Sequence record: PV654397.1
DNA: 64,000 nt
Direction: 5' to 3' (one strand)
Part shown: positions 7,487 through 63,848 of the stretch, one piece after another
Layout of the letters: each line of letters opens with the position of its first letter
How positions within the stretch are numbered: position 1 is the first letter of the stretch
Notes under the pieces: model-generated
The model's input: the letters and a program-made list of their open reading frames with translations, nothing else
Databases searched by the model: none
What the model was told of the DNA's origin: nothing
Position numbers and translations under genes: made by a program

Positions 7487-8083
7487 TTAATCACAGCTAC
7501 CGGAACTTGAACTAGAGCTTGAATCACAGCTAGAGCTATCATATGAACCAGTATCAGCAGAAGAGATATATGGCGTTACGATTGCTGCGGTGGTGGCTGC
7601 TGTAATAATATGGGAAGTATGGTCGTGTGTACCTTGTTGTGGTTCATCTTGGACTTTGTTTTTATTCTTCCCTTTAGTATAGCGAGCTTTCTTTGTAGTT
7701 TTGGTGTTCTTTGGTGCTTTAGTACTTTTCGGTGCTGCTTTAGGCTTTACTTCATTAACTACAGGAACAACAGTAACATTAACTTTAGGGTCAGATTCAT
7801 CAAGTGCATTGTGAACATTCACTTGCATTTGAACTTCAACTTTAAGTTCTTCTTGTTCTTCAGGAATAACTTTTTCAGGTTCTGGTGTAACCTGATCACG
7901 TTTATCATTAATCATGAAGTTGATATTACGTTCACCTAGCACTAATAAAGTAACGATGGTGAGTACTGGGGTTAGTACTAGACTAAGTAGTACATAGCCG
8001 ATGACACTACGATTGTAATTGTATGCAAGCATACCTGCAATAACTACACCAAGTACACTAATAACTGCTGCGATTGTTAACAT
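7487..8083 (-). CDS. membrane-anchored protein with Lys-rich linker and Ser-rich tail
   Basis: two N-terminal TM segments; C-terminus SYDSSSCDSSSSSSSGSCD. Confidence 0.8.
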   Translation of the reverse strand: MLTIAAVISVLGVVIAGMLAYNYNRSVIGYVLLSLVLTPVLTIVTLLVLGERNINFMINDKRDQVTPEPEKVIPEEQEELKVEVQMQVNVHNALDESDPKVNVTVVPVVNEVKPKAAPKSTKAPKNTKTTKKARYTKGKNKNKVQDEPQQGTHDHTSHIITAATTAAIVTPYISSADTGSYDSSSCDSSSSSSSGSCD

Positions 8084-8387
8084 ATTCTACTCCTTTGTAT
8101 ATAAATTTACCAATATCTTCGATGTATAAACAGATTCCACCTCGATCATTTAACACAAGCCAATCACCAAAACCACAACTGATGTTGCATATATTAAATT
8201 CTTCAATACCATCCGGTGAATACGCAATGAATGGACATATTTCATCTGATATACCATTTACATAGTTATTACATATTAAATCAAATGTATGTGAACTATA
8301 AGAATTATCAGTACTGAAAATGTGCATTAATGAACTAGATAGAATTACTATTGTTTTTTCCCACATTTTTAAAAAATCGTTATTCAC
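8058..8387 (-). CDS. hypothetical protein
   Basis: GTG start after GGAG SD; TGATATAAT upstream near 8420. Confidence 0.7.
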   Translation of the reverse strand: MNNDFLKMWEKTIVILSSSLMHIFSTDNSYSSHTFDLICNNYVNGISDEICPFIAYSPDGIEEFNICNISCGFGDWLVLNDRGGICLYIEDIGKFIYKGVEYVNNRSSY

Positions 8388-8444
8388 AACAACTACTCCA
8401 TGTCAGTGTTGTAATGAAATTATATCACCGAATCAAGATATGTC

Positions 8445-8750
8445 TCATGAGATTCGCATTTCATCCAGATATAAACTACATGCTTCGAAATTGTTGTCAG
8501 CACTTAAACCTAAATCAACCATCAGACCACAATGCGTTCCACAGAATTTCTTTATGTATAGTTTCTTATTGTTTGTACCTAAGTCGTATACATATTCATT
8601 TTCGAAAATAGTTTTTAAATCATTACAAATACTTTTTACTATCTTCATTACATCATTATGATACTCATATGGTATTCCATCTAGTTCATCAATGATAATA
8701 GCAAAACCATTGTCATAGTACTTTAGTTTATTGAATGTTTGTATATCCAT
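8445..8750 (-). CDS. hypothetical protein, probable family C
   Basis: NDLKTIFENEYVY. Confidence 0.65.
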   Translation of the reverse strand: MDIQTFNKLKYYDNGFAIIIDELDGIPYEYHNDVMKIVKSICNDLKTIFENEYVYDLGTNNKKLYIKKFCGTHCGLMVDLGLSADNNFEACSLYLDEMRIS

Positions 8751-9047
8751 TTAATATATAATCTCACTTACTTCTATGGTGTAGACACCATCATCAGTCA
8801 TTAATCTAACTGCAACTTTAATATTACTAGACATTCGTGTAACTATCAATCCAATAATTATACCATTCTTTAAAGTACCATTATGGTATCTAACTTTTAC
8901 TTCAGTTTTATTATCAATTAAGTATCTTCTAATTATGTGTATTTCCGTTCTAAACAGTTCTAAATAAACTTCACTATACTCCTTATCAGAACCATCAGCA
9001 CAGCTATACAATAAATGTACCTGTTCTAACAAAAGTTTTAAATTCAT
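8751..9047 (-). CDS. family C paralog
   Basis: helix then EVKVRY..G.IIG. Confidence 0.7.
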   Translation of the reverse strand: MNLKLLLEQVHLLYSCADGSDKEYSEVYLELFRTEIHIIRRYLIDNKTEVKVRYHNGTLKNGIIIGLIVTRMSSNIKVAVRLMTDDGVYTIEVSEIIY

Positions 9048-20851: not shown

Positions 20852-21384
20852 ACGAAAGTACTATGATTTGTTTTAATTAATATTGACGGGGTTTGCTTGA
20901 GCATATTTCATCCCCCCGCAGGGGAAAGAACAAAAAAAAGTTTGACGCTGGTGGCCTTCACATAGTTCATATCACGAATTCTCTTACGAGGCGAAAGCGG
21001 GTTGCTCTGTTTCTCTCTATCGCGGTTCTTGTAGCAACGGTCGTCGGTCTTAAACATCCCGACACATAATACAAATACCATATGACCAGTACTTGTATTT
21101 GATTTCACGAATTTTGGACGCAACTATATTGTATAAATTACGACCGCAAATTTCTCATGAAATCTCCCTTAGATAATTGGTAAGGTGCGATCCTTATATG
21201 TCTATCGAGGAACTCTCTTTATCCTATTGGAGTTCTTTATACAGCCGCATTGCCGTGAGTGGTTCAAACTATGCCATCATCTAACGGGTTTCATTTGCTG
21301 TTCGTACTGAAAGGACTACTCATCTACCCTCTACTTTTCGAGTGGATTAGGCTTTAATCATTTCCATATGGAACCTTTCAGGAT
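20852..21384. ncRNA. putative large structured non-coding RNA or cis element (unclassified)
   Basis: GC-richer intergenic island with several perfect helices, no credible ORF. Confidence 0.45.
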
Positions 21385-37984: not shown

Positions 37985-38529
37985 AGTAGATCCTTATACA
38001 TTGCATGTATTCTTACAATGTCTCTGTAATAACTCATATCTTCACGATTATCATTAAAAACAGTAACACTGAACACAGCAGTACTAATTGAACTATCAAC
38101 AATGTACTCTTTTAATTTATTATAAAGATATATGCACTTAGTAGATGTATCATCCCACATAAGACTATTTTGAAAGATGTTTTCTTCTGTGTTAGGATAT
38201 AAGTACTGCTCAATCTTGTACCCCAATGAACTATCACAGTTTTTATATACAGAAATAGATGGGACATTCATATTGCACATAATACTAATAACATTATCAT
38301 TGTATGTAGAAATTAAACTGGTACTGGATGCTACACTTTCATCGTAATTCAGTACTGAAATTCTTGCATTATCTGTGCAGTACAGATGTTTCATTCCACC
38401 TCTCATAGCCATAGTAAGAAATTTATCAGTGAACCATATTCCTTTTGTTTTCAGTATAGTTTCATGCATAAGATAAGTTTCAATGAAGATTTTTACACGC
38501 TCAAATGCCAAGTCAAGTTCATTGTACAT
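37975..38529 (-). CDS. family A paralog
   Basis: TEENIFQNSLMWD. Confidence 0.8.
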   Translation of the reverse strand: MYNELDLAFERVKIFIETYLMHETILKTKGIWFTDKFLTMAMRGGMKHLYCTDNARISVLNYDESVASSTSLISTYNDNVISIMCNMNVPSISVYKNCDSSLGYKIEQYLYPNTEENIFQNSLMWDDTSTKCIYLYNKLKEYIVDSSISTAVFSVTVFNDNREDMSYYRDIVRIHAMYKDLLCY

Positions 38530-38746
38530 AACGGATATCCTTCTGTAAAGAATCAATATATTCTTTAACAACTTGTTCCTGATACTGTGTACCCAAATAC
38601 ATCAGTACTTTTAACTCTTTGAATTCAGTACTATATGAGTTGATTTGCATCATTCTTTTAGAGTATATACCGAATAGTTTGTTAATGTCATCTTGGTCTA
38701 TTATTTTCATAAATTCTCTTTTTGACCTTATTTTGTAAGTACTCAA
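38519..38746 (-). CDS. family B paralog
   Basis: YLGTQYQEQVV. Confidence 0.8.
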   Translation of the reverse strand: MSTYKIRSKREFMKIIDQDDINKLFGIYSKRMMQINSYSTEFKELKVLMYLGTQYQEQVVKEYIDSLQKDIRYVQ

Positions 38747-38915
38747 TATAACCCTTCATCGCAACATCCTGTTTGTTAGAGCCAACGAAGAACAAAAGCT
38801 TGTATTCATGATAATTCATATTGGGCTTAGTGTTGAACCATATATCCCACACTGCACTCACAGTTCTTGTATATTCAATTCTATTAAATGTCTTTGAATA
38901 CTTCATCGAAATCAA
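38688..38915 (-). CDS. family B paralog
   Basis: FVGSNKQDVAM. Confidence 0.75.
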   Translation of the reverse strand: MISMKYSKTFNRIEYTRTVSAVWDIWFNTKPNMNYHEYKLLFFVGSNKQDVAMKGYIEYLQNKVKKRIYENNRPR

Positions 38916-44109: not shown

Positions 44110-44268
44110 AAGGAGAACGTTTGCGGCGGGGTATTTTTTGTTTCAGGAAACATGANNNNNNNNNNNNNNNNNNNNNNNNNNNNNNNNNNNNNNNNNNNNN
44201 NNNNNACATGTTTTTCAGCGAAAATTTTTTTGACCCCCCCCTGCGGCCTGTGAAAACAAAACGTCTCT
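44110..44268. other. 50-N assembly gap (44156-44205) flanked by imperfect inverted repeat
   Basis: AAACATG left and CATGTTT right, GGCGGGGT versus ACCCCCCC.TGC, GAGAACGTTT versus AAACGTCTC. Confidence 0.7.
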
Positions 44269-51203: not shown

Positions 51204-51614
51204 CTAATCGTGCCATTTAATAGGATACTCCGTTCCATTTATTGTATAAGATATAATCCATCCGTAATGAATAGGATGATTTTTGTCTGAATCAGGAATA
51301 AAATATAAAGATGTACTGGGGTTATAACTGAATAAATCGTTGTTACCAATTGTAAAATGTGATAACTCAATCTTCCTTGTACCTGTACTTGGACGAAGAA
51401 CATTCTTAACACCGAAGACTGTACCTTGATATTTCTCGGAAAATTCAAACAATGCATCTGCAATTAAATCACGAAACTCCGCATGTATGGTTTCAAAAAA
51501 ATCTATATTACACGATGTTTTAATATCCTTGAACTCCTTATATAAAGAGCTTCTTGTATTCAAAAGAAATATTACTTTTTTAAGATCCTGAACTATTTCT
51601 GGATTCATATTCAT
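51204..51614 (-). CDS. hypothetical protein, family C-like
   Basis: FSEKYQGTVF. Confidence 0.65.
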   Translation of the reverse strand: MNMNPEIVQDLKKVIFLLNTRSSLYKEFKDIKTSCNIDFFETIHAEFRDLIADALFEFSEKYQGTVFGVKNVLRPSTGTRKIELSHFTIGNNDLFSYNPSTSLYFIPDSDKNHPIHYGWIISYTINGTEYPIKWHD

Positions 51615-51843
51615 TTATCTCATTCTGTAACTTATGCATCAAAATTTGTATATTAATTTTTCGTCCAAGGTGATTGAGAAATTTCTGTACCATTTCTTCT
51701 TGTACTGATGTACCAAGATAAAATAACATATTAAATTCCGATAACCTCAGAGCAAAATCGTCATCTCCCCCTTGTAAACAAAAATCCCTGTACTTTGATG
51801 CATACAAATAACGGTTTATTTTTTTGTACATTTGGGTCTGCAT
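51580..51843 (-). CDS. family B paralog
   Basis: YLGTSVQEEMV. Confidence 0.8.
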   Translation of the reverse strand: MQTQMYKKINRYLYASKYRDFCLQGGDDDFALRLSEFNMLFYLGTSVQEEMVQKFLNHLGRKINIQILMHKLQNEINEYESRNSSGS

Positions 51844-52028
51844 TGTATCTCCTTTTTCATGCACCTTATTAGATTATCAACGTATTGATCCTGTACTATT
51901 GTCCCTAGATAAAATGATACTTCGAACTCTGATAATTTTATATTGAAAGGATCTACATATACATCTTTAATAAACTCTTTGTACTTCAACATATATGCAT
52001 TAGGTATATTCTTATATATCGATTTCAA
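51816..52028 (-). CDS. family B paralog
   Basis: YLGTIVQDQYV. Confidence 0.8.
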   Translation of the reverse strand: MKSIYKNIPNAYMLKYKEFIKDVYVDPFNIKLSEFEVSFYLGTIVQDQYVDNLIRCMKKEIQCRPKCTKK

Positions 52029-52960: not shown

Positions 52961-53335
52961 CTAGTATTGCACTGTTCTAATGAAAGTACCTTTACTCATG
53001 GATTTAAGCTTATGAACCTCTTCCTGCATACCCTTAATTAACCCTAAAGGTATAGGTAAATCATGTACTAAGCTGTACTGAAAGTATTCTTCTTCAGATA
53101 AAGTACTAACATCTGGAATGCCAATTTTAGTTAGATAATCTTGATGTGTTGACCAATAAATTATATCTTCAGTACTATTGTACTCCCCATATACTGAACA
53201 ATATTGATGAATATCTTTCCTGTACCCTTGAGCAATAAAGAACTTATCTACTGCATTACCAGCATTAATAGAATTCACTTCGATTGTCACAGTACTTGAG
53301 CTTGTTTTTCCTTTACTATGCATATTAATCCCCAA
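52961..53335 (-). CDS. family A paralog (short form)
   Basis: LSEEEYFQYSLVHD. Confidence 0.8.
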   Translation of the reverse strand: MGINMHSKGKTSSSTVTIEVNSINAGNAVDKFFIAQGYRKDIHQYCSVYGEYNSTEDIIYWSTHQDYLTKIGIPDVSTLSEEEYFQYSLVHDLPIPLGLIKGMQEEVHKLKSMSKGTFIRTVQY

Positions 53336-53511
53336 ATTAGATATCGAACACTATCAGCTTGATAGTTAGTTCCTACTGTGTGTTTTAATATTAACTCATC
53401 TTTCAGTACTGAACATTCTGCATTAGATATAGGAAGAGAATTAATTCTTTGAATTTCTGGTCGCAAAATACCGCGAAGCTTGCGGTAATCTTCGTATGAT
53501 AATATTTTCAT
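53287..53511 (-). CDS. family B paralog
   Basis: TVGTNYQADSV. Confidence 0.8.
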   Translation of the reverse strand: MKILSYEDYRKLRGILRPEIQRINSLPISNAECSVLKDELILKHTVGTNYQADSVRYLIWGLICIVKEKQAQVL

Positions 53512-53514
53512 TGT

Positions 53515-53859
53515 TTAGTACTCAACGATGTGTTCTTCATAATCACCATTAGGCTCCTGTTTAGATTCTTTCATTAGTACTACCATTTTATGTACTAATG
53601 GCATAGGAAACTCCAAATCCCATACTAATGATTCTTGAAAGTATTCCTCTTCAGATAAAGTACTTAAATCTTTAATATCAACGTGCTTGTATATTTTATT
53701 TTCGTAATTAACAAATGATATATATAAATCACTAACATAAGAATCATAGGTAATTGTGAATGGTTTACCCTTGTAATCCATTACATCTCTACATAGACTA
53801 CTTTTGATATATGTATGTTCAAATGATTTATATACCTTGAGTTGTATATTAGTTTTCAT
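53515..53859 (-). CDS. family A paralog (short form)
   Basis: LSEEEYFQESLVWD. Confidence 0.8.
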   Translation of the reverse strand: MKTNIQLKVYKSFEHTYIKSSLCRDVMDYKGKPFTITYDSYVSDLYISFVNYENKIYKHVDIKDLSTLSEEEYFQESLVWDLEFPMPLVHKMVVLMKESKQEPNGDYEEHIVEY

Positions 53860-54100
53860 ATTTCTCTTTATTAGCTTGTTTAGATTGTGTGGTTTTATAG
53901 TGAATTAAATCTATTAATGTAATCAAGTACAACGTCAAATAGTACTCTTGTTGATCTGTACCTAATGATACAAAGAACTTGTGCTCATAGATTAAAACCT
54001 GTTTCTCTTCAAATGGACATTTAATCCTCTGTATAGGCTTAAGTAAATGATAGTACTTATTAAATCTATGATACATTTCTAGTTCTGTCAGTACTTTCAT
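53849..54100 (-). CDS. family B paralog
   Basis: LGTDQQE. Confidence 0.8.
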   Translation of the reverse strand: MKVLTELEMYHRFNKYYHLLKPIQRIKCPFEEKQVLIYEHKFFVSLGTDQQEYYLTLYLITLIDLIHYKTTQSKQANKEKYEN

Positions 54101-54101
54101 A

Positions 54102-54323
54102 TTAAACACGTACTCCATTAGCTGTAGCATCACGTAAAGCTGTCAAATACTTCTGTACTGCTTGCTCTTGCTTATTTGTACCTAAAAGTATATACATCCA
54201 TAATTCACTGTAATGTACATCTTCTGTATAAGGGTTGTTGTAACTTTTTGATAATATAGCATCAAATTCAGATGCATGAACCCTTGCGAACTTAAGCATA
54301 TCTTGTTGTGTTATGATTCTCAT
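54102..54323 (-). CDS. family B paralog
   Basis: LGTNKQE. Confidence 0.8.
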   Translation of the reverse strand: MRIITQQDMLKFARVHASEFDAILSKSYNNPYTEDVHYSELWMYILLGTNKQEQAVQKYLTALRDATANGVRV

Positions 54324-54535
54324 ATCTTTTCCTGTACTATCTGCATAAGAATCTCTATGTGTGAATTAACAGTTCTCTCTTGATGCTGTGTTCCTAAGAG
54401 TGTCAGTACTATCATATCTGAACGCAAAAGATTTTTCTGAAGTTCACTTATATCAGTTCTTGAATCAAGTGCCATATATTTGTGATTATTCTTCCTGAAT
54501 AGTGCCAAGTACTCTTGATTTGATATTTCCTTCAT
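54320..54535 (-). CDS. family B paralog
   Basis: LGTQHQE. Confidence 0.8.
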   Translation of the reverse strand: MKEISNQEYLALFRKNNHKYMALDSRTDISELQKNLLRSDMIVLTLLGTQHQERTVNSHIEILMQIVQEKI

Positions 54536-54762
54536 AGTTTATCCCTGATGCCATTTAAAAGTGCTCTAATATGCTCCTGTACGAATTTGTACTGACTGTC
54601 TGTTCCTAGAGTGAGTAGTAATCTTAAATCTGAACTTTTGATATGATATTCTAAATCATTATTTGATTCTTGCATCAGTTTCTTAAAGGATGAGAAGTTT
54701 GCAGCCATTAGTTCAATGTATTCTGCTGTTCCTAGGGGTTTGTGTATTGGCTGTTTGTGCAT
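54532..54762 (-). CDS. family B paralog
   Basis: LGTDSQY. Confidence 0.8.
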   Translation of the reverse strand: MHKQPIHKPLGTAEYIELMAANFSSFKKLMQESNNDLEYHIKSSDLRLLLTLGTDSQYKFVQEHIRALLNGIRDKL

Positions 54763-54974
54763 TTTAATTTTATTACCCTTTTGAGTGTATTAATGTAATT
54801 ATACACATTGGCTTCTTGATAGTTAGTTCCCAGTGTAGCTTGAACATAGATTTCATTTAACTTAATAATTTTATCAGTATCTGGTAGTTTTGATGTGTTA
54901 ATGGCAAATAACTTCAAAAACAGTCCATTTAAGATTGTTAGGTATTCTTCGTCGGTAATGATTCGCATTTGCAT
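54732..54974 (-). CDS. family B paralog
   Basis: LGTNYQE. Confidence 0.8.
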   Translation of the reverse strand: MQMRIITDEEYLTILNGLFLKLFAINTSKLPDTDKIIKLNEIYVQATLGTNYQEANVYNYINTLKRVIKLKCTNSQYTNP

Positions 54975-55180
54975 TGGATAAACCTTTTTAGTTCTTTGAT
55001 GTAATCATTAATATTGTATTCTTGATAGTTAGTCCCTAGTGTAGCTTGAACATAGATTTCACTCATTAGAATATTTTTTTCTTCATCAAGTAAATCTGTG
55101 GTCTTTGCTATATACAATTTTAGAATTAAACTACTTAATAGTTCGTGGTATTCACTTGGTGAAAGGATTTTCATTTGCAT
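54938..55180 (-). CDS. family B paralog
   Basis: LGTNYQE. Confidence 0.8.
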   Translation of the reverse strand: MQMKILSPSEYHELLSSLILKLYIAKTTDLLDEEKNILMSEIYVQATLGTNYQEYNINDYIKELKRFIQCKCESLPTKNT

Positions 55181-55386
55181 GTTCTCAGTACAGATTCTTT
55201 AAGTTCATCGATGTAGTCCTCAACGAATTGCTCTTGGAAGTTAGTTCCAACATATAAAAGAACTCTTAAATCTGCTCTAAGTAACTCTTTTTCATCCTCA
55301 TCTATATCAGACAATGTTATGTTTAAGAATTTACTTGTATTAAAGATTAACAATTCTGTTTGTTCACTGTGGTTTAAAATTTTCAT
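55171..55386 (-). CDS. family B paralog
   Basis: VGTNFQE. Confidence 0.8.
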   Translation of the reverse strand: MKILNHSEQTELLIFNTSKFLNITLSDIDEDEKELLRADLRVLLYVGTNFQEQFVEDYIDELKESVLRTCK

Positions 55387-55594
55387 AATCTCTTTTTGCT
55401 TTCCTCGCCAAAAGGTACATATACGATTCTTCGTATTGTGCTTGGAAGTTTGTGTTTAAGAGTCGAAACAACTTCTGTTCTTCTAGAACGAGTTGCTTAT
55501 CTTCATAACAACGGTAGCGTATCAACTTTTTGTATTCGATGTTGATTACATCCATTACTATAAGCCCATGTTCATCATCTGTCAAGTGCTTCAT
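55364..55594 (-). CDS. family B paralog
   Basis: LNTNFQA. Confidence 0.8.
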   Translation of the reverse strand: MKHLTDDEHGLIVMDVINIEYKKLIRYRCYEDKQLVLEEQKLFRLLNTNFQAQYEESYMYLLARKAKRDYENFKPQ

Positions 55595-55833
55595 GCTTTT
55601 TTTCTTTTCCTGATGTGTTTAGTTAAAAGGTATATTAGTTTTCTGATGTATTCTTCTTGATAGTTTGTTCCTAGGAGTGCAAGAAGTTTTGCTTCAACTA
55701 AAGCTAATTGACGTTCTTCAAATGTGTGTTCCAGTATGTACTTTGGGTTTGATTTTTTAGAAATTGCACTATTAGTTTTCATTACAATCTTATGATATTC
55801 ATTAACTGTTAGGATTTTTAAATTCTTGAGCAT
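55591..55833 (-). CDS. family B paralog
   Basis: LGTNYQE. Confidence 0.8.
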   Translation of the reverse strand: MLKNLKILTVNEYHKIVMKTNSAISKKSNPKYILEHTFEERQLALVEAKLLALLGTNYQEEYIRKLIYLLTKHIRKRKKA

Positions 55834-56059
55834 GTATCTTTTCCTTTATAGAGAATTTAAGATATCGAAGCATACTTTCAATGTAATACTCTTGTCTGTC
55901 AGTTCCAAGAAAGTACAGGAGTTGAATGTATAAAACTTCTGCACTCCTTTCGGCATGTGACTTGTTTGTGTCGTTTGGAAGTTGATTTGTAAGTTTTCTG
56001 GATTTAATTAATCGTTCTTTTAACTCATCGTCTGTTAAGTATATCATTTTATTTTGCAT
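55802..56059 (-). CDS. family B paralog
   Basis: LGTDRQE. Confidence 0.8.
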   Translation of the reverse strand: MQNKMIYLTDDELKERLIKSRKLTNQLPNDTNKSHAERSAEVLYIQLLYFLGTDRQEYYIESMLRYLKFSIKEKIHAQEFKNPNS

Positions 56060-56279
56060 TTACTTTTTCCTTAATACTCATTACAAGATGTTCAATCATA
56101 TTTTGAACCATAAATTCTTGTTTATCAGTTCCAAGAACGTATGGTAGCTTCTGAAACAATACATTCGCAGACATTTCATATATTGATTGATTTGGAACGA
56201 ACTTAAGAGTAATGTTATTGGCTTTTAACATCTTCTCTTGAAATTCTTCATTCGTTAAGTATATCATTTCACTTTGCAT
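56049..56279 (-). CDS. family B paralog
   Basis: LGTDKQE. Confidence 0.8.
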   Translation of the reverse strand: MQSEMIYLTNEEFQEKMLKANNITLKFVPNQSIYEMSANVLFQKLPYVLGTDKQEFMVQNMIEHLVMSIKEKVNAK

Positions 56280-56505
56280 TTACTTTTTCCATAATAGTAA
56301 TTTTGAGATATTTAATTATACGTTCAACGTGATACTCCTGCCTATCAGTTCCAAGAAGGTATGGTAATGACTGGAATAAAACTTCTGCACTCCTTTCTGC
56401 TGGGGTTTGGTTTGGGTTGTGTGGAAGATATTTTGTAAGTTTTTTGGATTTATCTAGTCTTTCTGTTAACTCATCATGTGTTAAGTATATCATTTCATTT
56501 TGCAT
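56269..56505 (-). CDS. family B paralog
   Basis: LGTDRQE. Confidence 0.8.
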   Translation of the reverse strand: MQNEMIYLTHDELTERLDKSKKLTKYLPHNPNQTPAERSAEVLFQSLPYLLGTDRQEYHVERIIKYLKITIMEKVNAK

Positions 56506-56732
56506 TTAATGTTTCTTACATAAATTGTCTGGATTAAACAATCAATCCAAGTTTGAATATATTGGTTTTGATACTGTGTGCCTAAGAGACTCTGCATTTT
56601 AAACTCTGCTTCAAGTTCATATCTCTTTTCTATAGAAAAGCTCAAATGACCATATTCTTTATCGTATCTTCTCAGTGCTTCCCCAATTCTATCAAATCTT
56701 TCTGCTAATCTGATGTTATTCACAATATTCAT
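56490..56732 (-). CDS. family B paralog
   Basis: LGTQYQN. Confidence 0.8.
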   Translation of the reverse strand: MNIVNNIRLAERFDRIGEALRRYDKEYGHLSFSIEKRYELEAEFKMQSLLGTQYQNQYIQTWIDCLIQTIYVRNIKCKMK

Positions 56733-57007
56733 CGATCAGTACACCTCAGTGGTTGGGTCATTTGATGAAAGTACAGCTTACCTTTGATTTCCAATAGTAA
56801 CTCAGCAATTAATCGATTTACTTCTGGCTCTTGATAGTTTGTTCCCAATAATACACCCATCTTTAACTCACGCATCATAATCATTTTCTTACTGTGTTGA
56901 ATTTTTTGGTTGTGATAGATTGTATTACGTTTGTGCGTAATTTTTGTCATACGCTCGGTATATTCATCTTTACTTAAATTGATCATTTGCATGTTCATCA
57001 ACCTCAC
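56729..57007 (-). CDS. family B paralog
   Basis: LGTNYQE. Confidence 0.8.
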   Translation of the reverse strand: MRLMNMQMINLSKDEYTERMTKITHKRNTIYHNQKIQHSKKMIMMRELKMGVLLGTNYQEPEVNRLIAELLLEIKGKLYFHQMTQPLRCTDR

Positions 57008-57218
57008 ATTTATTTTCGATACAAATCATGAGTTCTCTAAGATAGTTTTTTATCTTACCTTCCTGATGGTTCGTCCCCAGGAAGTTGCATAACTCTGCTT
57101 CTATTATTTTGATTCTTCTGGTGTCAGGTTTCAATCTTTTGTTATTGAAGATTTGAATCCTTATATCCCTTGATGCATTTAAACGTTTTTGATATTCATG
57201 GAAAGATAAATTAATCAT
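56970..57218 (-). CDS. family B paralog
   Basis: LGTNHQE. Confidence 0.8.
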   Translation of the reverse strand: MINLSFHEYQKRLNASRDIRIQIFNNKRLKPDTRRIKIIEAELCNFLGTNHQEGKIKNYLRELMICIENKCEVDEHANDQFK

Positions 57219-57433
57219 TTACTTTGTATCTCTCTCTTGAGGGCATCAATTAACAACAGTACAGCATTCTCTTGATAGTTTGTTCCTAAGACTGAAAGCA
57301 TCTTAATCTCATTTACTACAATCAACTTCTTTGAGCGTTCAATAATGTTACTATTATAAACGGCGTTACGTGCTGGATAAGTTTTTGCAAGACGTTCATA
57401 ATATTCATCTTTACTTAAATTAATCATTTGCAT
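57215..57433 (-). CDS. family B paralog
   Basis: LGTNYQE. Confidence 0.8.
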   Translation of the reverse strand: MQMINLSKDEYYERLAKTYPARNAVYNSNIIERSKKLIVVNEIKMLSVLGTNYQENAVLLLIDALKREIQSK

Positions 57434-57642
57434 TTACTTTTGACCTCCTTGACTAATGCATCAACCCACATGTCTATATACATTTGTTGATAGTTTGTCC
57501 CTATGAGTGCCCCTGCATAGAGTTCAGCTATCATTGCATGTTTTAGGTTGGCAGGGATGCTCTTATCAGATTGAATCTTTACTCTTCTGTTGGCACATGT
57601 TTTCAGGAGTCTGATGTATTCAAAGCCTTGTAATTTTCTCAT
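57424..57642 (-). CDS. family B paralog
   Basis: IGTNYQQ. Confidence 0.8.
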   Translation of the reverse strand: MRKLQGFEYIRLLKTCANRRVKIQSDKSIPANLKHAMIAELYAGALIGTNYQQMYIDMWVDALVKEVKSKCK

Positions 57643-57854
57643 TCTTTTGATATCACCTTGTTACGTAAGGCACTTAACAATACGTCAGTGTAGATGTTTT
57701 GATAGTTTGTTCCTACGAAAGCACCCAACTTCATTTCAGCTATTATAACACATTTATCCTCTTGTGCAATAGACTTGTCTAAAGAAATACTAACAACTTT
57801 CCTTCTTATAGCTTGTAACCTCCAATGATACTGATACTCATTTAGGGTTATCAT
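57639..57854 (-). CDS. family B paralog
   Basis: VGTNYQN. Confidence 0.8.
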   Translation of the reverse strand: MITLNEYQYHWRLQAIRRKVVSISLDKSIAQEDKCVIIAEMKLGAFVGTNYQNIYTDVLLSALRNKVISKE

Positions 57855-58089
57855 TCTCTCGCCTCCATATCTCGGTTCTAATGTGTTGACATTGTGCTTC
57901 GATGAACATATCTATTGATTTGGCAATTGCGTTTTTATCTGTGCCAGTCATCAGTACAAGCATCTCGGCCTCACAGTGAAGTAAACGCATGATATCATAG
58001 GGTAATATTCCAGATACCGTGTCATAGTGTTTCTGTGCCAGTGTCTGTAATAGTTTACAATACATTTTGTGATTTAGTCTGTGTCGCAT
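57838..58089 (-). CDS. family B paralog (variant)
   Basis: MTGTDKNA. Confidence 0.7.
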   Translation of the reverse strand: MRHRLNHKMYCKLLQTLAQKHYDTVSGILPYDIMRLLHCEAEMLVLMTGTDKNAIAKSIDMFIEAQCQHIRTEIWRRENDNPK

Positions 58090-58325
58090 TTTTTATTCCA
58101 TTCTTTTTTGGCCTTGATGGTTTTATATTGGATTTGGTTTCTTAATGCTGATAAGTATCGTTGAATGAACAGATCTTGATAGTTTGTTCCAATGAATTTC
58201 ATAAGATAAAGTTCACCGTTGATAACATCCACTTCAGGTGCACCATATAAGGCATTGTTTTTTCTAAGGGCATGGATTAAAGAGAATAGGGCAGTTTGAT
58301 ACTCAACTCCTGATAAAGTCTTCAT
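58074..58325 (-). CDS. family B paralog
   Basis: IGTNYQD. Confidence 0.8.
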   Translation of the reverse strand: MKTLSGVEYQTALFSLIHALRKNNALYGAPEVDVINGELYLMKFIGTNYQDLFIQRYLSALRNQIQYKTIKAKKEWNKKCDTD

Positions 58326-58560
58326 GTTTTGTGAGCCAATAATCATCTAGTTTATCCTGTATAACATTCATTAATTGTTCGACATATTCTGTGCAAAACT
58401 TATCTTGATATTGAGTCCCCATAAAGTACAGCAACCATAGCTCATTAACTTTAGCTCGCATTTGGTTCCATGTAAGGCTGGGGTCATCGTAGACTATCCT
58501 TGCTATAGGGGTTAGTTTACGGACTATAGTTTCATATTCATCTAGTGTTAAGTGTTTCAT
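58303..58560 (-). CDS. family B paralog
   Basis: MGTQYQD. Confidence 0.8.
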   Translation of the reverse strand: MKHLTLDEYETIVRKLTPIARIVYDDPSLTWNQMRAKVNELWLLYFMGTQYQDKFCTEYVEQLMNVIQDKLDDYWLTKHEDFIRS

Positions 58561-58781
58561 TTACCTAAATCCCTGACATGACATTTTAAGGCCGTGATGT
58601 GGTTGTCAACCATAACCTCCTGATAGTTTGTTCCTACAAATGGTATTAATGTTGAGTCTGTTAGTATAACATACTTTTCATTGGATGTTAGTGATTCATC
58701 ATCGTAAACTTGAAGTCTAAAGTTCTTCCCTTGTTCTAATCGTTTAAGATATTCTTGGGTGTTTATGTCTTTCATTTGCAT
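58557..58781 (-). CDS. family B paralog
   Basis: VGTNYQE. Confidence 0.8.
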   Translation of the reverse strand: MQMKDINTQEYLKRLEQGKNFRLQVYDDESLTSNEKYVILTDSTLIPFVGTNYQEVMVDNHITALKCHVRDLGK

Positions 58782-58990
58782 TTGTCCCTTATTAGATCAG
58801 TGAGGGCAACTATGTGTGCAACAACATACTCTTCCTGAAAGTTCGTCCCCAGTACAGCCATCATGCGTATATCGGTGGTGTTTATCCTGTGTTCCCTTAC
58901 ACATAAACCTTCTGTGTGAGGAAGTGTAAAATATTTGTTTATTGCAGCAATGATAATTTTATTCTTCTCGTAATTACTTAAATGTTTCAT
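58772..58990 (-). CDS. family B paralog
   Basis: LGTNFQE. Confidence 0.8.
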   Translation of the reverse strand: MKHLSNYEKNKIIIAAINKYFTLPHTEGLCVREHRINTTDIRMMAVLGTNFQEEYVVAHIVALTDLIRDKCK

Positions 58991-59199
58991 AGTTTGCTCT
59001 TAATGTATTTCTGGAGTGCAATTATATACTCATTCAAGAAGTGCTCCTGATAATCTGTGCCGAGGAATGCACCCAATAGTATATCATTTTCCAATACTAA
59101 TGCTAAGTTCAAATCATCAGTCTCTTCATATACTATGAGAATTTCAAGTTGTCTTGCAGCGACGCGTTCGGTATATAGATTTGAGTTAATGCTATTCAT
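58987..59199 (-). CDS. family B paralog
   Basis: LGTDYQE. Confidence 0.8.
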   Translation of the reverse strand: MNSINSNLYTERVAARQLEILIVYEETDDLNLALVLENDILLGAFLGTDYQEHFLNEYIIALQKYIKSKL

Positions 59200-59408
59200 A
59201 GTTTACTCTTAATGTAATTCTGGAGTGCAATTAAGTATTCCCCTACATAATACACCTGAAAGTCTGTATCCAAAAATGCACCCATAAGTAAATCTTTTTC
59301 TAATACCCTTGATAAGTTAAGGTCTGCATTTGAATTGTATATAATTAAGATTTTATTCTGGACAGAAACAAAACGTATCTTATATTCTTCTGGTGTTAAA
59401 AAAATCAT
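59196..59408 (-). CDS. family B paralog
   Basis: LDTDFQV. Confidence 0.8.
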   Translation of the reverse strand: MIFLTPEEYKIRFVSVQNKILIIYNSNADLNLSRVLEKDLLMGAFLDTDFQVYYVGEYLIALQNYIKSKL

Positions 59409-59614
59409 AGTTTACTCTTAATATCTTCTATTAAAAAATGAATCCAATCGTCAACATACTCTTCCTGATGGTTTGTGTTCAGTACAGCCAACATGCGGAT
59501 CTCTGCTCTTGCAACTTGGATTTCAGTTTTAGAAAGGTCTTTGCTGATATCAAACATTAAGTCCATGTATTTCAAGATAAGACCGAATGATTGGGTTCGT
59601 GTTATAGTTTTCAT
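59405..59614 (-). CDS. family B paralog
   Basis: LNTNHQE. Confidence 0.8.
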   Translation of the reverse strand: MKTITRTQSFGLILKYMDLMFDISKDLSKTEIQVARAEIRMLAVLNTNHQEEYVDDWIHFLIEDIKSKL

Positions 59615-59811
59615 TGTTTCCTCGTGGACAATATTTCATTTTTCAATGCATCCATATATTGAATCACCCATCTTCCCTGATAGCTTGTACCCAATGTAAT
59701 CAAAAGGTATAACTCAATTCGTTCTAAGTTTGTGTCTGTGTTATAAATCTTTACCATGTTTTTACGTAACAGTTCTTGATAATCTTCTTTATTTAAAATA
59801 CGCATTTTCAT
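59611..59811 (-). CDS. family B paralog
   Basis: LGTSYQG. Confidence 0.8.
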   Translation of the reverse strand: MKMRILNKEDYQELLRKNMVKIYNTDTNLERIELYLLITLGTSYQGRWVIQYMDALKNEILSTRKQ

Positions 59812-60005
59812 AGTCTACCTTTTATGTCCCTTCGTAATTCTTGTAAGTATAGTTCGATATACTTTTCTTGATAGTTAGTTCCTATGAAAAGTTTCATAAC
59901 CAATTCACGCTTATATGCAATACCACGGATATGTGACATATGTAGGATATATGCCATGTTGGATATGAGTGTGTGGTTGTGCTCTTCTTGAGTTAAAATA
60001 CGCAT
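59808..60005 (-). CDS. family B paralog (first gene of the array)
   Basis: IGTNYQE; GGAG SD. Confidence 0.8.
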   Translation of the reverse strand: MRILTQEEHNHTLISNMAYILHMSHIRGIAYKRELVMKLFIGTNYQEKYIELYLQELRRDIKGRL

Positions 60006-60035: not shown

Positions 60036-60063
60036 ATAATATACGATTCATATAAAAAGTCAA
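60036..60063 (-). promoter_or_regulatory. sigma70 promoter of family B array
   Basis: TTGACT-N16-TATTAT. Confidence 0.7.
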
Positions 60064-60254
60064 TAACATTTTATAAGTAATACCCCTTTATCGAAGTCGC
60101 TAAGGTTACCCGCCCTTTAGCCCCCTACGCATTTTGCCATAGTCCAATCCCTTTTTATTCATAAAAGTCAAGGGATTACCTATGCATTTTTTTAACGCTG
60201 AAGTTTAAAAATGCCTTGACTTTTTTATGATTCAGTACTAAATCCCTTTACGCA

Positions 60255-61546: not shown

Positions 61547-61588
61547 TATATAATAGCAAAGGGACTGACCGGAGTCAATCCCTTTTTT
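61547..61588 (-). repeat. terminator-promoter cassette, copy 1 (42-bp exact repeat)
   Basis: hairpin with UCCG loop carrying TTGACT-N17-TATTAT; identical at 63807-63848. Confidence 0.85.
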
Positions 61589-63806: not shown

Positions 63807-63848
63807 TATATAATAGCAAAGGGACTGACCGGAGTCAATCCCTTTTTT
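63807..63848 (-). repeat. terminator-promoter cassette, copy 2
   Basis: identical to 61547-61588. Confidence 0.85.

What the first reader, a model, noticed from the sequence alone, without database searches (positions are those of the whole stretch)
53849..60005. 28 contiguous ~70-aa LGTNYQE mini-proteins in one operon (family B)
Seen: a head-to-tail array with about 220-bp period behind one promoter (60036-60063). The pattern is N-terminal [IL][ST]xxE[YF] helix, variable middle, E-L-x4-5-LGTNYQE-xx-V-xx-YI-xx-L. Five more copies lie at 38519, 38688, 51580, 51816 and 53287. Inference: a three-helix scaffold with a conserved turn and a hypervariable face, suited to an early-expressed panel of inhibitors or decoys, each matched to an allele of a host target.
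Basis: partly seen in the sequence, partly recalled or inferred. Interest (0 to 1): 0.82.

Follow-up and report, generated by a model that had tools for sequence, protein, structure and literature searches.

The report
Tandem mini-protein gene array in jumbo coliphage
A giant E. coli phage carries 28 back-to-back genes (33 in the genome) for one family of tiny three-helix proteins of unknown function, placed right beside its terminal repeat; the block is real, under selection and diverges far faster than the rest of the genome, which suggests a diversified set of host- or competitor-directed binding proteins.

Summary
The window is Escherichia phage WPEC5 (Asteriusvirus-type jumbo phage, 381 kb).

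**The array**
- Window 53849-60005 (minus strand) holds 28 contiguous genes of 65-89 aa, period 218±14 bp.
- All 27 junctions overlap by 4-32 nt.
- The five outlying copies are real; a profile finds exactly 33 copies in the genome.

**Family and fold**
- The family is phrog_4148 (unknown function). It has no Pfam, NCBIfam or PDB relative.
- Only 99 clusters among 1.84 billion proteins match.
- AlphaFold gives a confident three-helix bundle (pLDDT 97 and 93) with only generic helical matches.
- The conserved GT..Q turn looks structural.

**Position**
- Gene 1 starts 98 bp inside the unique region next to a 21.7-kb direct terminal repeat.
- It lies behind a sigma-70-like promoter conserved in five of six phages compared.

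**Evolution**
- The paralogs are ancient (about 25% identity, no DNA-level repeat) and mostly keep positional orthologs across the genus (pooled dN/dS 0.38).
- The locus diverges much faster than its surroundings: 41% versus 79-95% protein identity to phage Turkey5.
- Whole units are gained and lost, and dS is mosaic from gene to gene.
- No site shows positive selection.

**Not tested:** expression timing and function.

**Best reading:** an early, non-virion panel of diversified binding proteins. It is a new family within a known kind (viral multigene families).

The parts
60087..60152 (-). Block of about 65 nt, invariant at nearly every position across six Asteriusvirus genomes, that spans the boundary of the 21.7-kb direct terminal repeat. 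The right repeat copy starts at window 60103. Probably the terminus-generating or packaging recognition site.
   Evidence: Window 60103 onward equals record position 1 onward at 100% identity. Alignment A2 shows the block is invariant at nearly every position, including in Turkey5. Terminal repeats of about 21 kb are confirmed experimentally in fEgEco12 (PMC13070987).
60036..60063 (-). Sigma-70-like promoter TTGACT-16-TATTAT, followed by a 5'UTR of about 30 nt with a GGAG ribosome-binding site before gene 1.
   Evidence: The -35 and a -10-like hexamer (TATTAT or TAAAAT) are conserved in WPEC5, phAPEC6, 121Q, UE-S1 and Turkey5 but deleted in SD-15_S21. Function is inferred, not shown.
53849..60005 (-). 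The array as a whole: 28 head-to-tail genes of one family, all junctions overlapping.
59808..60005 (-). Array gene 1 (65 aa)
   Evidence: Profile hit. AF2 model pLDDT 97.2. Only 58% identical to its orthologs.
59611..59811 (-). Array gene 2 (66 aa)
59405..59614 (-). Array gene 3 (69 aa)
59196..59408 (-). Array gene 4 (70 aa); more recent duplicate of gene 5 (56% identity).
58987..59199 (-). Array gene 5 (70 aa)
58772..58990 (-). Array gene 6 (72 aa)
58557..58781 (-). Array gene 7 (74 aa). It has no reciprocal-best ortholog in phAPEC6, SD-15, UE-S1 or 121Q (one only in Turkey5, 42%). Contigs of a related phage skip it.
   Evidence: Unit-size skip 58542->58763.
58303..58560 (-). Array gene 8 (85 aa)
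58074..58325 (-). Array gene 9 (83 aa from the annotated start)
57838..58089 (-). Array gene 10 (83 aa); the most divergent motif (TGTDKN, lacks the Q).
   Evidence: E 1.8e-17.
57639..57854 (-). Array gene 11 (71 aa)
57424..57642 (-). Array gene 12 (72 aa)
57215..57433 (-). Array gene 13 (72 aa). WPEC3 carries one extra unit here, flanked by a repeated 58-nt 5' segment.
56970..57218 (-). Array gene 14 (82 aa)
56729..56992 (-). Array gene 15 (87 aa)
   Evidence: AF2 model pLDDT 92.9 with the same fold and a disordered C-tail.
56490..56732 (-). Array gene 16 (80 aa). Deeply divergent allele (44-47% to orthologs, dS saturated). Contigs of a related phage skip it.
   Evidence: Skip 56508->56738.
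56269..56505 (-). Array gene 17 (78 aa); member of the more recent triplet 17/18/19.
56049..56279 (-). Array gene 18 (76 aa)
55802..56059 (-). Array gene 19 (85 aa)
55591..55833 (-). Array gene 20 (80 aa, pI 10)
55364..55594 (-). Array gene 21 (76 aa); the most conserved member (95-99% to orthologs).
55171..55386 (-). Array gene 22 (71 aa, pI 4.5)
54938..55180 (-). Array gene 23 (80 aa); more recent duplicate of gene 24 (53% identity).
54732..54968 (-). Array gene 24 (78 aa)
54532..54762 (-). Array gene 25 (76 aa)
54320..54535 (-). Array gene 26 (71 aa)
54102..54323 (-). Array gene 27 (73 aa)
53849..54118 (-). Array gene 28 (89 aa from the annotated start)
52961..53859 (-). Probable tail of the same transcription unit: a family-A gene (53515-53859), family-B copy 29 (53287-53511) and a family-A gene (52961-53335). 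They have no gap or predicted terminator before the next intergenic promoter-like site (52959-52931).
51816..52028 (-). Outlying family copy 30 (70 aa, TTG start)
51580..51843 (-). Outlying family copy 31 (87 aa)
38688..38915 (-). Outlying family copy 32 (75 aa, TTG start; GS instead of GT)
38519..38746 (-). Outlying family copy 33 (75 aa, TTG start)

Best explanation
**Shown.**
- The locus is a lineage-specific expansion of one family of small, soluble three-helix-bundle proteins (phrog_4148, no known function) in Asteriusvirus jumbo phages.
- Twenty-eight copies lie head to tail with overlapping stop and start codons. The block begins 98 bp inside the unique DNA that adjoins the 21.7-kb direct terminal repeat.
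- The copies are old paralogs (about 25% identity, no DNA-level repeat). Most keep a positional ortholog, and pooled dN/dS is about 0.38.
- The conserved residues are the buried heptad positions plus a G-T-x-x-Q turn.
- The locus is a hotspot of turnover. Whole units are gained and lost by in-register unequal recombination between the conserved 5' ends of neighbouring genes. Deeply diverged alleles sit beside near-identical ones. The block diverges several times faster than the flanking and core genes.

**Inferred.**
- The GT residue forms a beta-bridge to the N-terminus, and N/D...E looks like a helix N-capping box. The famous motif therefore holds the scaffold together rather than forming an active site.
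- Host RNA polymerase transcribes the block early from the conserved sigma-70-type promoter as one long polycistronic, translationally coupled message.
- The products are non-virion proteins that work as a panel of binders. One rigid helical scaffold presents many different surfaces, and each paralog engages a different host protein (takeover or anti-defence) or a competing-phage protein.
For: **Coding and family**
- All 33 copies hit the profile at E <= 3e-14.
- Pooled dN/dS is 0.37-0.38 against three phages.
- 32 of 33 copies match phrog_4148.

**Fold**
- AF2 pLDDT is 97.2 and 92.9 with the same topology.
- Per-column conservation follows a heptad core pattern. Variability among paralogs and among orthologs coincide (rho 0.71).

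**Position**
- The terminal-repeat boundary is at window 60103. The same 98-bp offset occurs in fEgEco12, whose repeats were verified by restriction digests.
- The promoter is conserved in 5 of 6 phages.
- All junctions overlap. The scan finds no strong terminator-like site on the coding strand within the array.

**Non-virion**
- None of the phAPEC6 array genes gp467c-489c appears in the phAPEC6 virion proteome.

**Age and orthology**
- TRF finds no DNA repeat.
- The array is collinear with orthologs.
- About 12-13 diverged copies occur in Alcyoneusvirus (RaK2, K64-1) and none in Mimasvirus, Eneladusvirus or Munch-like phages.

**Turnover**
- Genome-wide copy number is 22-33.
- WPEC3 has one extra unit flanked by a 58-nt repeat.
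- Unit-size skips occur in contigs of related phages.
- dS per gene ranges from 0 to saturation between neighbours.

**Fast divergence**
- Against Turkey5, array identity has a median of 41%. The seven adjacent terminal-repeat genes have a median of 95%, and three larger genes score 79-90%.

**Analogy**
- The SPO1 host-takeover module consists of 24 small early genes in the terminal redundancy (PMC10531801).
Against: - There is no direct evidence of transcription, timing, translation or any binding partner. The raw RNA-seq run had 0 reads on the locus, and the metatranscriptome contigs may be DNA.
- Sigma-70-like matches are not enriched over shuffles, and internal promoter-like sites exist, for example 55585-55557.
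- SD-15_S21 lacks the promoter segment.
- No pooled column reaches pN/pS >= 1. Gene-wide omega is only modestly above the flanking genes (0.38 against roughly 0.1-0.3). An arms race is therefore not demonstrated.
- Elevated dS suggests that recombination with diverged lineages explains much of the divergence.
- No sequence or fold relative has a known function.
Confidence: 0.45

Rival explanations
1. The proteins are subunits of one assembly. Translationally coupled, roughly equimolar paralogs would co-assemble (helical bundles packing side by side) into an intracellular structure or chaperone-like scaffold used early in infection.
For: All 27 junctions overlap, which favours coupled, near-stoichiometric synthesis. 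The models show long amphipathic helices 1 and 3. Residues just before the GT turn are paralog-specific but conserved within orthologs (profile columns 41-45), which could encode specific neighbour contacts.
Against: Copy number varies from 22 to 33 among genus members, and single units come and go between phages that are 98% identical. That is hard to reconcile with a fixed assembly. None of the proteins is in the virion proteome. The self-association prediction gave no verdict and is not evidence either way.
Confidence: 0.12
2. The proteins are small nucleic-acid-binding regulators (transcription-factor-like or RNA-binding). The family would have expanded to control many phage or host sites, as was proposed for the roughly 35-copy zinc-ribbon expansion of Bacillus phage G.
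For: The proteins are three-helix domains. The L-G-T-x-x-Q turn before helix 3 superficially recalls the turn and recognition helix of helix-turn-helix domains (sequence inspection). Twenty-two of 33 members are basic. The phage G precedent is in PMC7824862.
Against: Foldseek and VIA-align returned no significant helix-turn-helix or other nucleic-acid-binding match for either model (best E 1.7, best Z 6.5, all generic helical). The loop between helices 2 and 3 is six residues with a beta-bridge, unlike an HTH turn. Eleven members are acidic, down to pI 4.4. The PDB profile search found nothing.
Confidence: 0.12
3. The array is a dosage amplification ('gene accordion'). Copies would be functionally redundant and exist to raise the amount of one inhibitor.
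For: The arrangement is tandem and copy number varies through unequal recombination. A few younger duplicate pairs exist: 4/5, 13/15, 17/18/19 and 23/24 at 53-61% identity.
Against: Mean paralog identity is about 25% and no DNA-level repeat is detectable. Most copies have their own conserved ortholog across the genus under purifying selection. Surfaces and charge differ widely (pI 4.4-10). This points to old, differentiated paralogs.
Confidence: 0.08
4. The ORFs are evolutionary filler. Nearly neutral, dispensable ORFs would persist by hitch-hiking in a recombination-prone region and have no specific function.
For: The locus shows high divergence and turnover. Surface sites evolve near neutrality (pN/pS 0.7-0.9). 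Single units can be lost. One member in 121Q is truncated and one in SD-15_S21 has no start codon.
Against: dN/dS is clearly below 1 for almost every gene. The hydrophobic core, the GT..Q turn and the reading frames have been conserved since before the Asteriusvirus-Alcyoneusvirus split. About 6 kb is kept in every one of 36 genomes.
Confidence: 0.06

Closest known systems
PHROGs family phrog_4148 (unknown function), with satellite phrog_28039
   Same: This is the family itself. Thirty-two of 33 copies match phrog_4148 (best E 1e-24) and 12 also match phrog_28039.
   Different: PHROGs records only a cluster of sequences without function, structure or genomic arrangement. The tandem array, its position next to the terminal repeat, the fold and the evolutionary pattern are not described there or in any paper found.
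SPO1 host-takeover module (24 small early genes in the 13-kb terminal redundancy of Bacillus phage SPO1); from my own knowledge, also the terminal-repeat 'Tre' genes of Twort-like phages and the T5 pre-early region
   Same: These are clusters of small, non-structural genes of mostly unknown function at or next to a long terminal repeat, read by host RNA polymerase. Characterised members each inhibit a different host process (PMC10531801).
   Different: The SPO1 genes are not described as paralogs of one family and, from my own knowledge, are read from several promoters. They lie inside the repeat. Here one family is repeated 28 times in one overlapping block just outside the repeat. Early expression and host inhibition are untested here.
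Multigene families of large eukaryotic DNA viruses (African swine fever virus MGF110/360/505; poxvirus Bcl-2-like alpha-helical family). Comparison from established knowledge, not tested here.
   Same: These are tandem, terminus-proximal paralog families whose copy number changes by unequal recombination. In the poxvirus family one helical scaffold has diverged so that members bind different host immune proteins. This is the best analogy for how the array might work.
   Different: There is no sequence or fold relationship. The host is bacterial, the proteins are much smaller (65-89 aa), and no function is known.
Zinc-ribbon expansion (about 35 copies) in Bacillus jumbo phage G (Iyer et al. 2021, PMC7824862)
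   Same: It is a lineage-specific expansion of a very small domain to tens of copies in a jumbo phage, with function only guessed.
   Different: The fold is different (zinc ribbon against three-helix bundle), and a DNA-binding or transcription-factor role was proposed there. Whether that expansion is tandem is not stated in the passage read.
Tri-helical helix-turn-helix DNA-binding domains
   Same: Both have three helices and a Gly-containing turn followed by a polar Thr/Gln at the start of the last helix.
   Different: No HTH protein appears above noise in Foldseek or VIA-align searches. The loop is longer and is tied to the N-terminus by a beta-bridge. A third of the members are acidic.

Membership tests
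phrog_4148 | Significant match to the family HMM | tested here: met
   32 of 33 copies match at E <= 0.01, best 1.2e-24.
Tandem multigene family / lineage-specific expansion | Many significantly similar paralogs in one genome | tested here: met
   33 profile hits at E 3e-14 to 2e-24. Alignment A1.
Tandem multigene family / lineage-specific expansion | Head-to-tail contiguity | tested here: met
   28 consecutive genes with no foreign gene between them and all junctions overlapping.
Tandem multigene family / lineage-specific expansion | Expansion restricted to one lineage | tested here: met
   22-33 copies in seven Asteriusvirus genomes and 12-13 diverged copies in RaK2 and K64-1. There are none in GAP32, Munch or fHe-Yen9-04, and one doubtful hit in CBB. 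Only 99 clusters among 1.84 billion proteins match.
Tandem multigene family / lineage-specific expansion | Copy-number change by unit-wise recombination | tested here: met
   WPEC3 has one extra unit flanked by a 58-nt repeated 5' segment. Skips of 220 and 229 nt occur in contigs of related phages.
Early host-takeover module (SPO1 type) | Location in or next to the long terminal repeat | tested here: met
   Gene 1 starts 98 bp from the repeat boundary. The same offset occurs in fEgEco12. The array lies outside the repeat.
Early host-takeover module (SPO1 type) | Host sigma-70-type promoter | tested here: inconclusive
   A consensus-like site is conserved in 5 of 6 phages. Such matches are not enriched over shuffles, and the site is deleted in SD-15_S21.
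Early host-takeover module (SPO1 type) | Expression early in infection | not testable with these tools
   The raw RNA-seq run gave 0 reads. The other runs are contigs that may be DNA.
Early host-takeover module (SPO1 type) | Products inhibit host processes | not testable with these tools
   Requires expression and toxicity assays.
Known anti-defence proteins (anti-CRISPR, Ocr-like DNA mimics and similar) | Sequence or fold similarity to a characterised anti-defence protein | tested here: not met
   The PDB profile search was empty. Foldseek against PDB gave a best E of 1.7-2.3. T4 Vs.4 appears only at E 9.9 and TM 0.45, which is noise. BFVD hits are only family members.
Known anti-defence proteins (anti-CRISPR, Ocr-like DNA mimics and similar) | Signature of recurrent positive selection | tested here: not met
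   Pooled omega is 0.38 and no column reaches pN/pS >= 1. The method is pairwise and low-powered, so this does not exclude episodic selection.
Helix-turn-helix DNA-binding domain | Tri-helical HTH fold detectable by structure comparison | tested here: not met
   The only transcription-regulator row (2qtq) has E 1.7 and TM 0.39.
Virion structural protein | Detected in purified particles | tested here: not met
   The published phAPEC6 virion proteome (62 proteins) contains none of gp461c-gp499c (PMC7247149; gene map).

The most novel reading that the evidence does not exclude
The array, together with the neighbouring family-A expansion of 40 or more copies, would be a phage counterpart of the terminal multigene families of poxviruses and African swine fever virus. 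It would be a heritable repertoire of scaffolded mini-binders, each neutralising a different host defence or competitor protein. Cassette-like recombination among co-circulating phages would keep the repertoire diverse, and it would be delivered as the first unique-sequence operon after the terminal repeat. That would be a new class of phage counter-defence organisation and a natural library of three-helix binders.
Probability: 0.2. Interest if true: 0.85.

Novelty: new member of a known kind. Interest (0 to 1): 0.58.

Why it matters
**Scale.** Thirty-three genes (about 4% of the phage's 749 annotated features) belong to one uncharacterised mini-protein family. With the adjacent family-A expansion, about 35 kb next to the genome end consists of two expanded families.

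**Evolutionary signal.** The array is the fastest-diverging block in its neighbourhood, yet each copy is under purifying selection. That is the pattern expected of genes facing variable partners. Most jumbo-phage genes have no known function, and this locus gives a concrete, easily tested entry point.

**Ease of testing.**
- The proteins are tiny and are confidently predicted to fold.
- Asteriusvirus phages that plate on E. coli K-12 exist (Sharanji).
- The whole array can be deleted, or each member expressed alone.

**Practical use.** If the members prove to be specific inhibitors, they would be a ready-made panel of natural three-helix binders and probes of host defence.

**If dispensable.** The locus would document how large phage genomes accumulate and maintain paralog arrays.

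Tried and rejected
1. **Homology to known proteins.** The PDB profile search gave only E > 1 noise. NCBIfam and PADLOC gave only single-member marginal hits. No Pfam family is recorded on the array genes of related contigs. The ESM Atlas feature search gave no usable hit.
2. **Fold comparison of two confident models.** I used Foldseek against PDB and BFVD, VIA-align wide, and Atlas. The only results were family members or generic helical arrangements (Z <= 6.5).
3. **Self-association.** The two-copy complex prediction gave no verdict (score 0.02, controls not run). It is not evidence either way.
4. **'Rosetta stone' fusion.** P0098 (269 aa, in other Asteriusvirus genomes) joins a family domain to a 200-aa C-terminal part. 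That part has no relative in PHROGs, PDB, five related genomes or the 5.8-billion-protein index. This was a dead end.
5. **P0085.** This 1368-aa hit with seven stretches is a repetitive LG.DTRT protein and a chance match.
6. **Expression.** The only raw RNA-seq run offered had no reads on the locus. The wastewater metatranscriptome contigs cover it thinly and cannot be told from DNA.
7. **DNA-level tandem repeat or non-coding repeat element.** Rejected. TRF finds nothing and dN/dS is below 1.
8. **Literature.** No paper among the Asteriusvirus, RaK2-like or jumbo-phage reviews read mentions this family or array.

Full report
**Identity of the window.** The array region is 100% identical to Escherichia phage WPEC5 (PV654397.1, 381,326 bp). 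It is 82-98% identical to 35 other records, all PBECO4/121Q-like jumbo phages of E. coli and Salmonella; those carrying a taxonomy line are in genus Asteriusvirus. The window corresponds to record positions 299,563-363,562 in the same orientation.

**Observation.**
- ORF listing and a six-frame motif scan find 28 contiguous minus-strand genes from 60005 down to 53849.
- They are 65-89 aa (mean 76), spaced 218 +/- 14 bp. Every one of the 27 junctions overlaps by 4-32 nt, and twelve are ATGA overlaps.
- Each gene has an ATG start. GenBank annotates each as a hypothetical protein.
- The alignment of these 28 plus the five outlying copies (A1) has about 25% mean identity. G, T, Q and one L are conserved in at least 90% of copies.
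- A profile of A1 finds exactly 33 copies in the 381-kb genome, at E 3e-14 to 2e-24, all inside this window.
- Tandem Repeats Finder sees nothing at DNA level. The periodicity exists only at the protein level.

**Position in the genome.**
- Window 60103 onward is identical to record position 1 onward. The same offset holds for matches out to at least 20.5 kb. The record therefore carries direct terminal repeats of about 21.7 kb, and the array starts 98 bp inside the unique region beside the right-hand copy.
[quoted passage not shown] The array there starts at 21,091, the same 98-bp offset. Sharanji has a 20,668-bp repeat (PMC11895373).
- The 250-nt gap upstream of gene 1 contains a block of about 65 nt (window 60087-60152) that spans the repeat boundary. 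It is invariant at nearly every position in six phages and is probably the terminus or packaging site.
- After that block comes TTGACT-16-TATTAT (60063-60036) and a GGAG ribosome-binding site.
- The -35 and a -10-like hexamer at the same spacing are conserved in five of six phages. SD-15_S21 lacks this segment.
- Genes in the repeat, the array and everything downstream in the window are co-oriented on the minus strand.
- The array runs without a gap into three more genes (family A, family B copy 29, family A). The next intergenic promoter-like site is at 52959-52931.
- If the promoter is real, the transcription unit is therefore about 7.1 kb and 31 genes.
- Sigma-70-like matches are not enriched over shuffled sequence. 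The promoter call rests on its position and conservation.

**What the family is.**
- Thirty-two of 33 copies match phrog_4148, which has unknown function.
- NCBIfam and PADLOC give nothing meaningful. Pfam has no hit on the array genes of related contigs. A PDB profile search is empty.
- An exhaustive profile search of 1.84 billion representative proteins finds only 99 clusters.
- By tblastn a single member hits 36 phage records, all Escherichia or Salmonella.
- Genome-wide profile counts are 33 in WPEC5 and WPEC3, 32 in phAPEC6, 30 in UE-S1, 29 in SD-15_S21, 27 in 121Q and 22 in Turkey5.
- The Alcyoneusvirus phages RaK2 and K64-1 have 12-13 diverged, loosely clustered copies with the same motif.
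- GAP32, Munch and fHe-Yen9-04 have none, and CBB has one doubtful hit.

**Structure.**
- AlphaFold2 on member 1 (65 aa) gives pLDDT 97.2. On member 15 (87 aa, deeper alignment) it gives 92.9.
- Both models show a beta-bridge between residue 2-4 and the invariant Thr, plus three helices: a long H1, a shorter H2 and a long H3. Member 15 also has a disordered C-tail.
- Per-column analysis shows conserved hydrophobic positions in a heptad-like pattern (profile columns 4, 9, 13, 20, 23, 35, 40, 42, 46, 55, 58, 59, 62, 66).
- The conserved turn reads L46-G47-T48-N49-x-Q51-E52.
- From the DSSP strings and general helix-capping rules (my inference), G-T makes the turn and bridge, and N/D...E is an N-capping box for helix 3. 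The motif therefore looks structural.
- Foldseek (PDB), VIA-align (48,161 chains) and the ESM Atlas give only generic helical matches (best E 1.7, best Z 6.5). BFVD returns only family members.
- Isoelectric points range from 4.4 to 10.0, and 11 of 33 members are acidic.

**Evolution.**
- The array is collinear across phAPEC6, SD-15_S21, UE-S1 and 121Q. Most WPEC5 genes have a reciprocal-best ortholog at the corresponding position, at 44-99% identity.
- A few closer pairs (4/5, 13/15, 17/18/19, 23/24 at 53-61%) mark younger duplications.
- Gene 7 has no reciprocal-best ortholog in phAPEC6, SD-15_S21, UE-S1 or 121Q. It has one only in Turkey5, at 42%.
- Pooled Nei-Gojobori dN/dS is 0.37-0.38 against three phages. 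Flanking non-family genes mostly range from 0.1 to 0.3. The ORFs are therefore real genes under somewhat relaxed purifying selection.
- dS is strikingly mosaic, from 0 (gene 28 against phAPEC6) to saturated (gene 16) between neighbours. This indicates replacement of individual genes by diverged alleles through recombination.
- No pooled column reaches pN/pS >= 1. Variable, presumably exposed positions sit at 0.7-0.9 and core positions at 0-0.3.
- Positions just before the turn (columns 41, 43-45) differ among paralogs but are conserved within orthologs. They are candidates for paralog-specific function.

**Unit turnover.**
- WPEC3 is 98% identical to WPEC5 and has one extra unit. The same 58-nt 5' segment borders it on both sides.
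- Contigs of a related phage skip 229 nt (gene 16) and 220 nt (gene 7).
- These events fit in-register unequal recombination between the conserved N-terminal coding segments of neighbouring units.

**The locus as a divergence hotspot (median or range of protein identity to WPEC5).**

| Gene set | vs Turkey5 | vs 121Q |
|---|---|---|
| Seven genes just upstream, in the terminal repeat | 87-100% (median 95%) | not compared this way |
| Three larger genes elsewhere in the window | 79-90% | 92-94% |
| Array, reciprocal best hits | median 41%; only 12 of 28 have a reciprocal best hit | median 74% |

**Expression.**
- The only raw RNA-seq run offered had no reads on the locus. The other runs are assembled contigs that cannot separate RNA from DNA. 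Expression is untested.
- The published phAPEC6 virion proteome (62 proteins) lists none of gp461c-gp499c. The proteins are not detectable virion components.

**Interpretation.**
- Shown: this is a large, ancient, selectively maintained but rapidly turning-over tandem family of small three-helix proteins. It sits at the first unique position beside the terminal repeat, behind a conserved sigma-70-like promoter.
- Inferred: early polycistronic expression by host RNA polymerase, and function as a panel of diversified binders aimed at host or competitor proteins.
- The inference rests on four things: the position (compare the SPO1 host-takeover module, PMC10531801), the non-virion status, the scaffold-plus-variable-surface pattern, and the hotspot behaviour.
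- It is weakened by the absence of positive selection and of any functional homolog.
- Rivals are a co-assembling complex, nucleic-acid-binding regulators, simple dosage amplification and near-neutral filler. The report sections weigh each one. None is excluded, but copy-number plasticity, fold searches, deep divergence with orthology, and dN/dS below 1 argue against them respectively.

**Comparison with what is known, and novelty.**
- The family already exists as an unannotated PHROG and as 'hypothetical protein' in 36 GenBank records.
- No paper found describes the array.
- Multigene families near genome ends are well known in poxviruses and African swine fever virus (established knowledge). 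A roughly 35-copy zinc-ribbon expansion is noted in phage G (PMC7824862).
- This is therefore a new family within a known kind of genome feature. It is unusual among phages for its copy number, its single overlapping block and its exact placement at the terminal-repeat boundary.

**Dead ends.**
- The self-association prediction gave no verdict.
- A natural fusion protein, P0098, has an orphan C-terminal domain.
- A 1368-aa hit was a chance match to a repetitive protein.

The masked N run at 44156-44205 was left untouched.

Noticed in passing
window about 25000-53900, minus strand: A second, larger paralog expansion ('family A') of 100-215-aa proteins sharing a motif like S-E-E-E-[YF]-F-Q-x-S-[LT]. 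A regex finds about 35 clear matches, and eight or more further copies are visible in the ORF list, so there are 40 or more copies. The eight sampled members fall into several PHROGs of unknown function (13866, 15629, 33987, 9317, 12674, 30978). With family B it fills about 35 kb next to the terminal repeat, and five family-B copies are interleaved in it. It is also highly diverged in Turkey5 (26-47% for the three family-A genes compared).
   Followed up: partly
window 60087-60152: A block of about 65 nt, invariant at nearly every position (...GGGATTGGACTATG...ATGCGT.GGGGG...GCGGGTAACCTTAGCGACTTCG...), spans the terminal-repeat boundary at 60103 in six phages. It is probably the terminase recognition or cutting site that defines the genome ends.
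   Followed up: partly
window 61550-61585 and 63810-63845, minus strand: Two identical promoter-like sites have their -35 TTGACT embedded in a 12-bp-stem hairpin (AAAGGGATTGACTCCGGTCAGTCCCTTT, then GCTATTAT). Segments of up to about 230 nt from this region recur many times through the terminal repeat at 74-94% identity. This suggests a repeated regulatory cassette in front of the small terminal-repeat genes.
   Followed up: no
L006 (Salmonella phage SD-15_S21) 3087-3271 and about 4669: SD-15_S21 lacks the roughly 75-nt segment that holds the array promoter in the other phages. It also has one family copy without a start codon, probably a pseudogene. 121Q has a truncated 53-aa copy.
   Followed up: partly
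L014-L016, gene at 8001-8810 (protein P0098): Some Asteriusvirus genomes encode a 269-aa protein whose first roughly 65 residues are a family-B domain fused to an orphan 200-aa C-terminal region. Two of the carrying contigs (about 350 kb) sit in assemblies filed as E. coli genomes, that is, complete lytic jumbo-phage genomes inside bacterial assemblies.
   Followed up: partly
window 56508-56738 and 58542-58763: Contigs from a public run holding a related phage skip exactly one gene unit at each place (229 nt and 220 nt; at the second, 5 other letters stand between the two sides). This is natural copy-number polymorphism of the array.
   Followed up: partly
window 44156-44205: A masked run of 50 N lies inside the family-A region.
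   Followed up: no
L004 (Turkey5) 400-984: In Turkey5 a gene annotated as a serine/threonine protein kinase lies in the terminal repeat about 4 kb upstream of the array. The only fully invariant non-initiator residue of family B is a Thr (profile column 48). I did not examine any link, and the idea is purely speculative.
   Followed up: no
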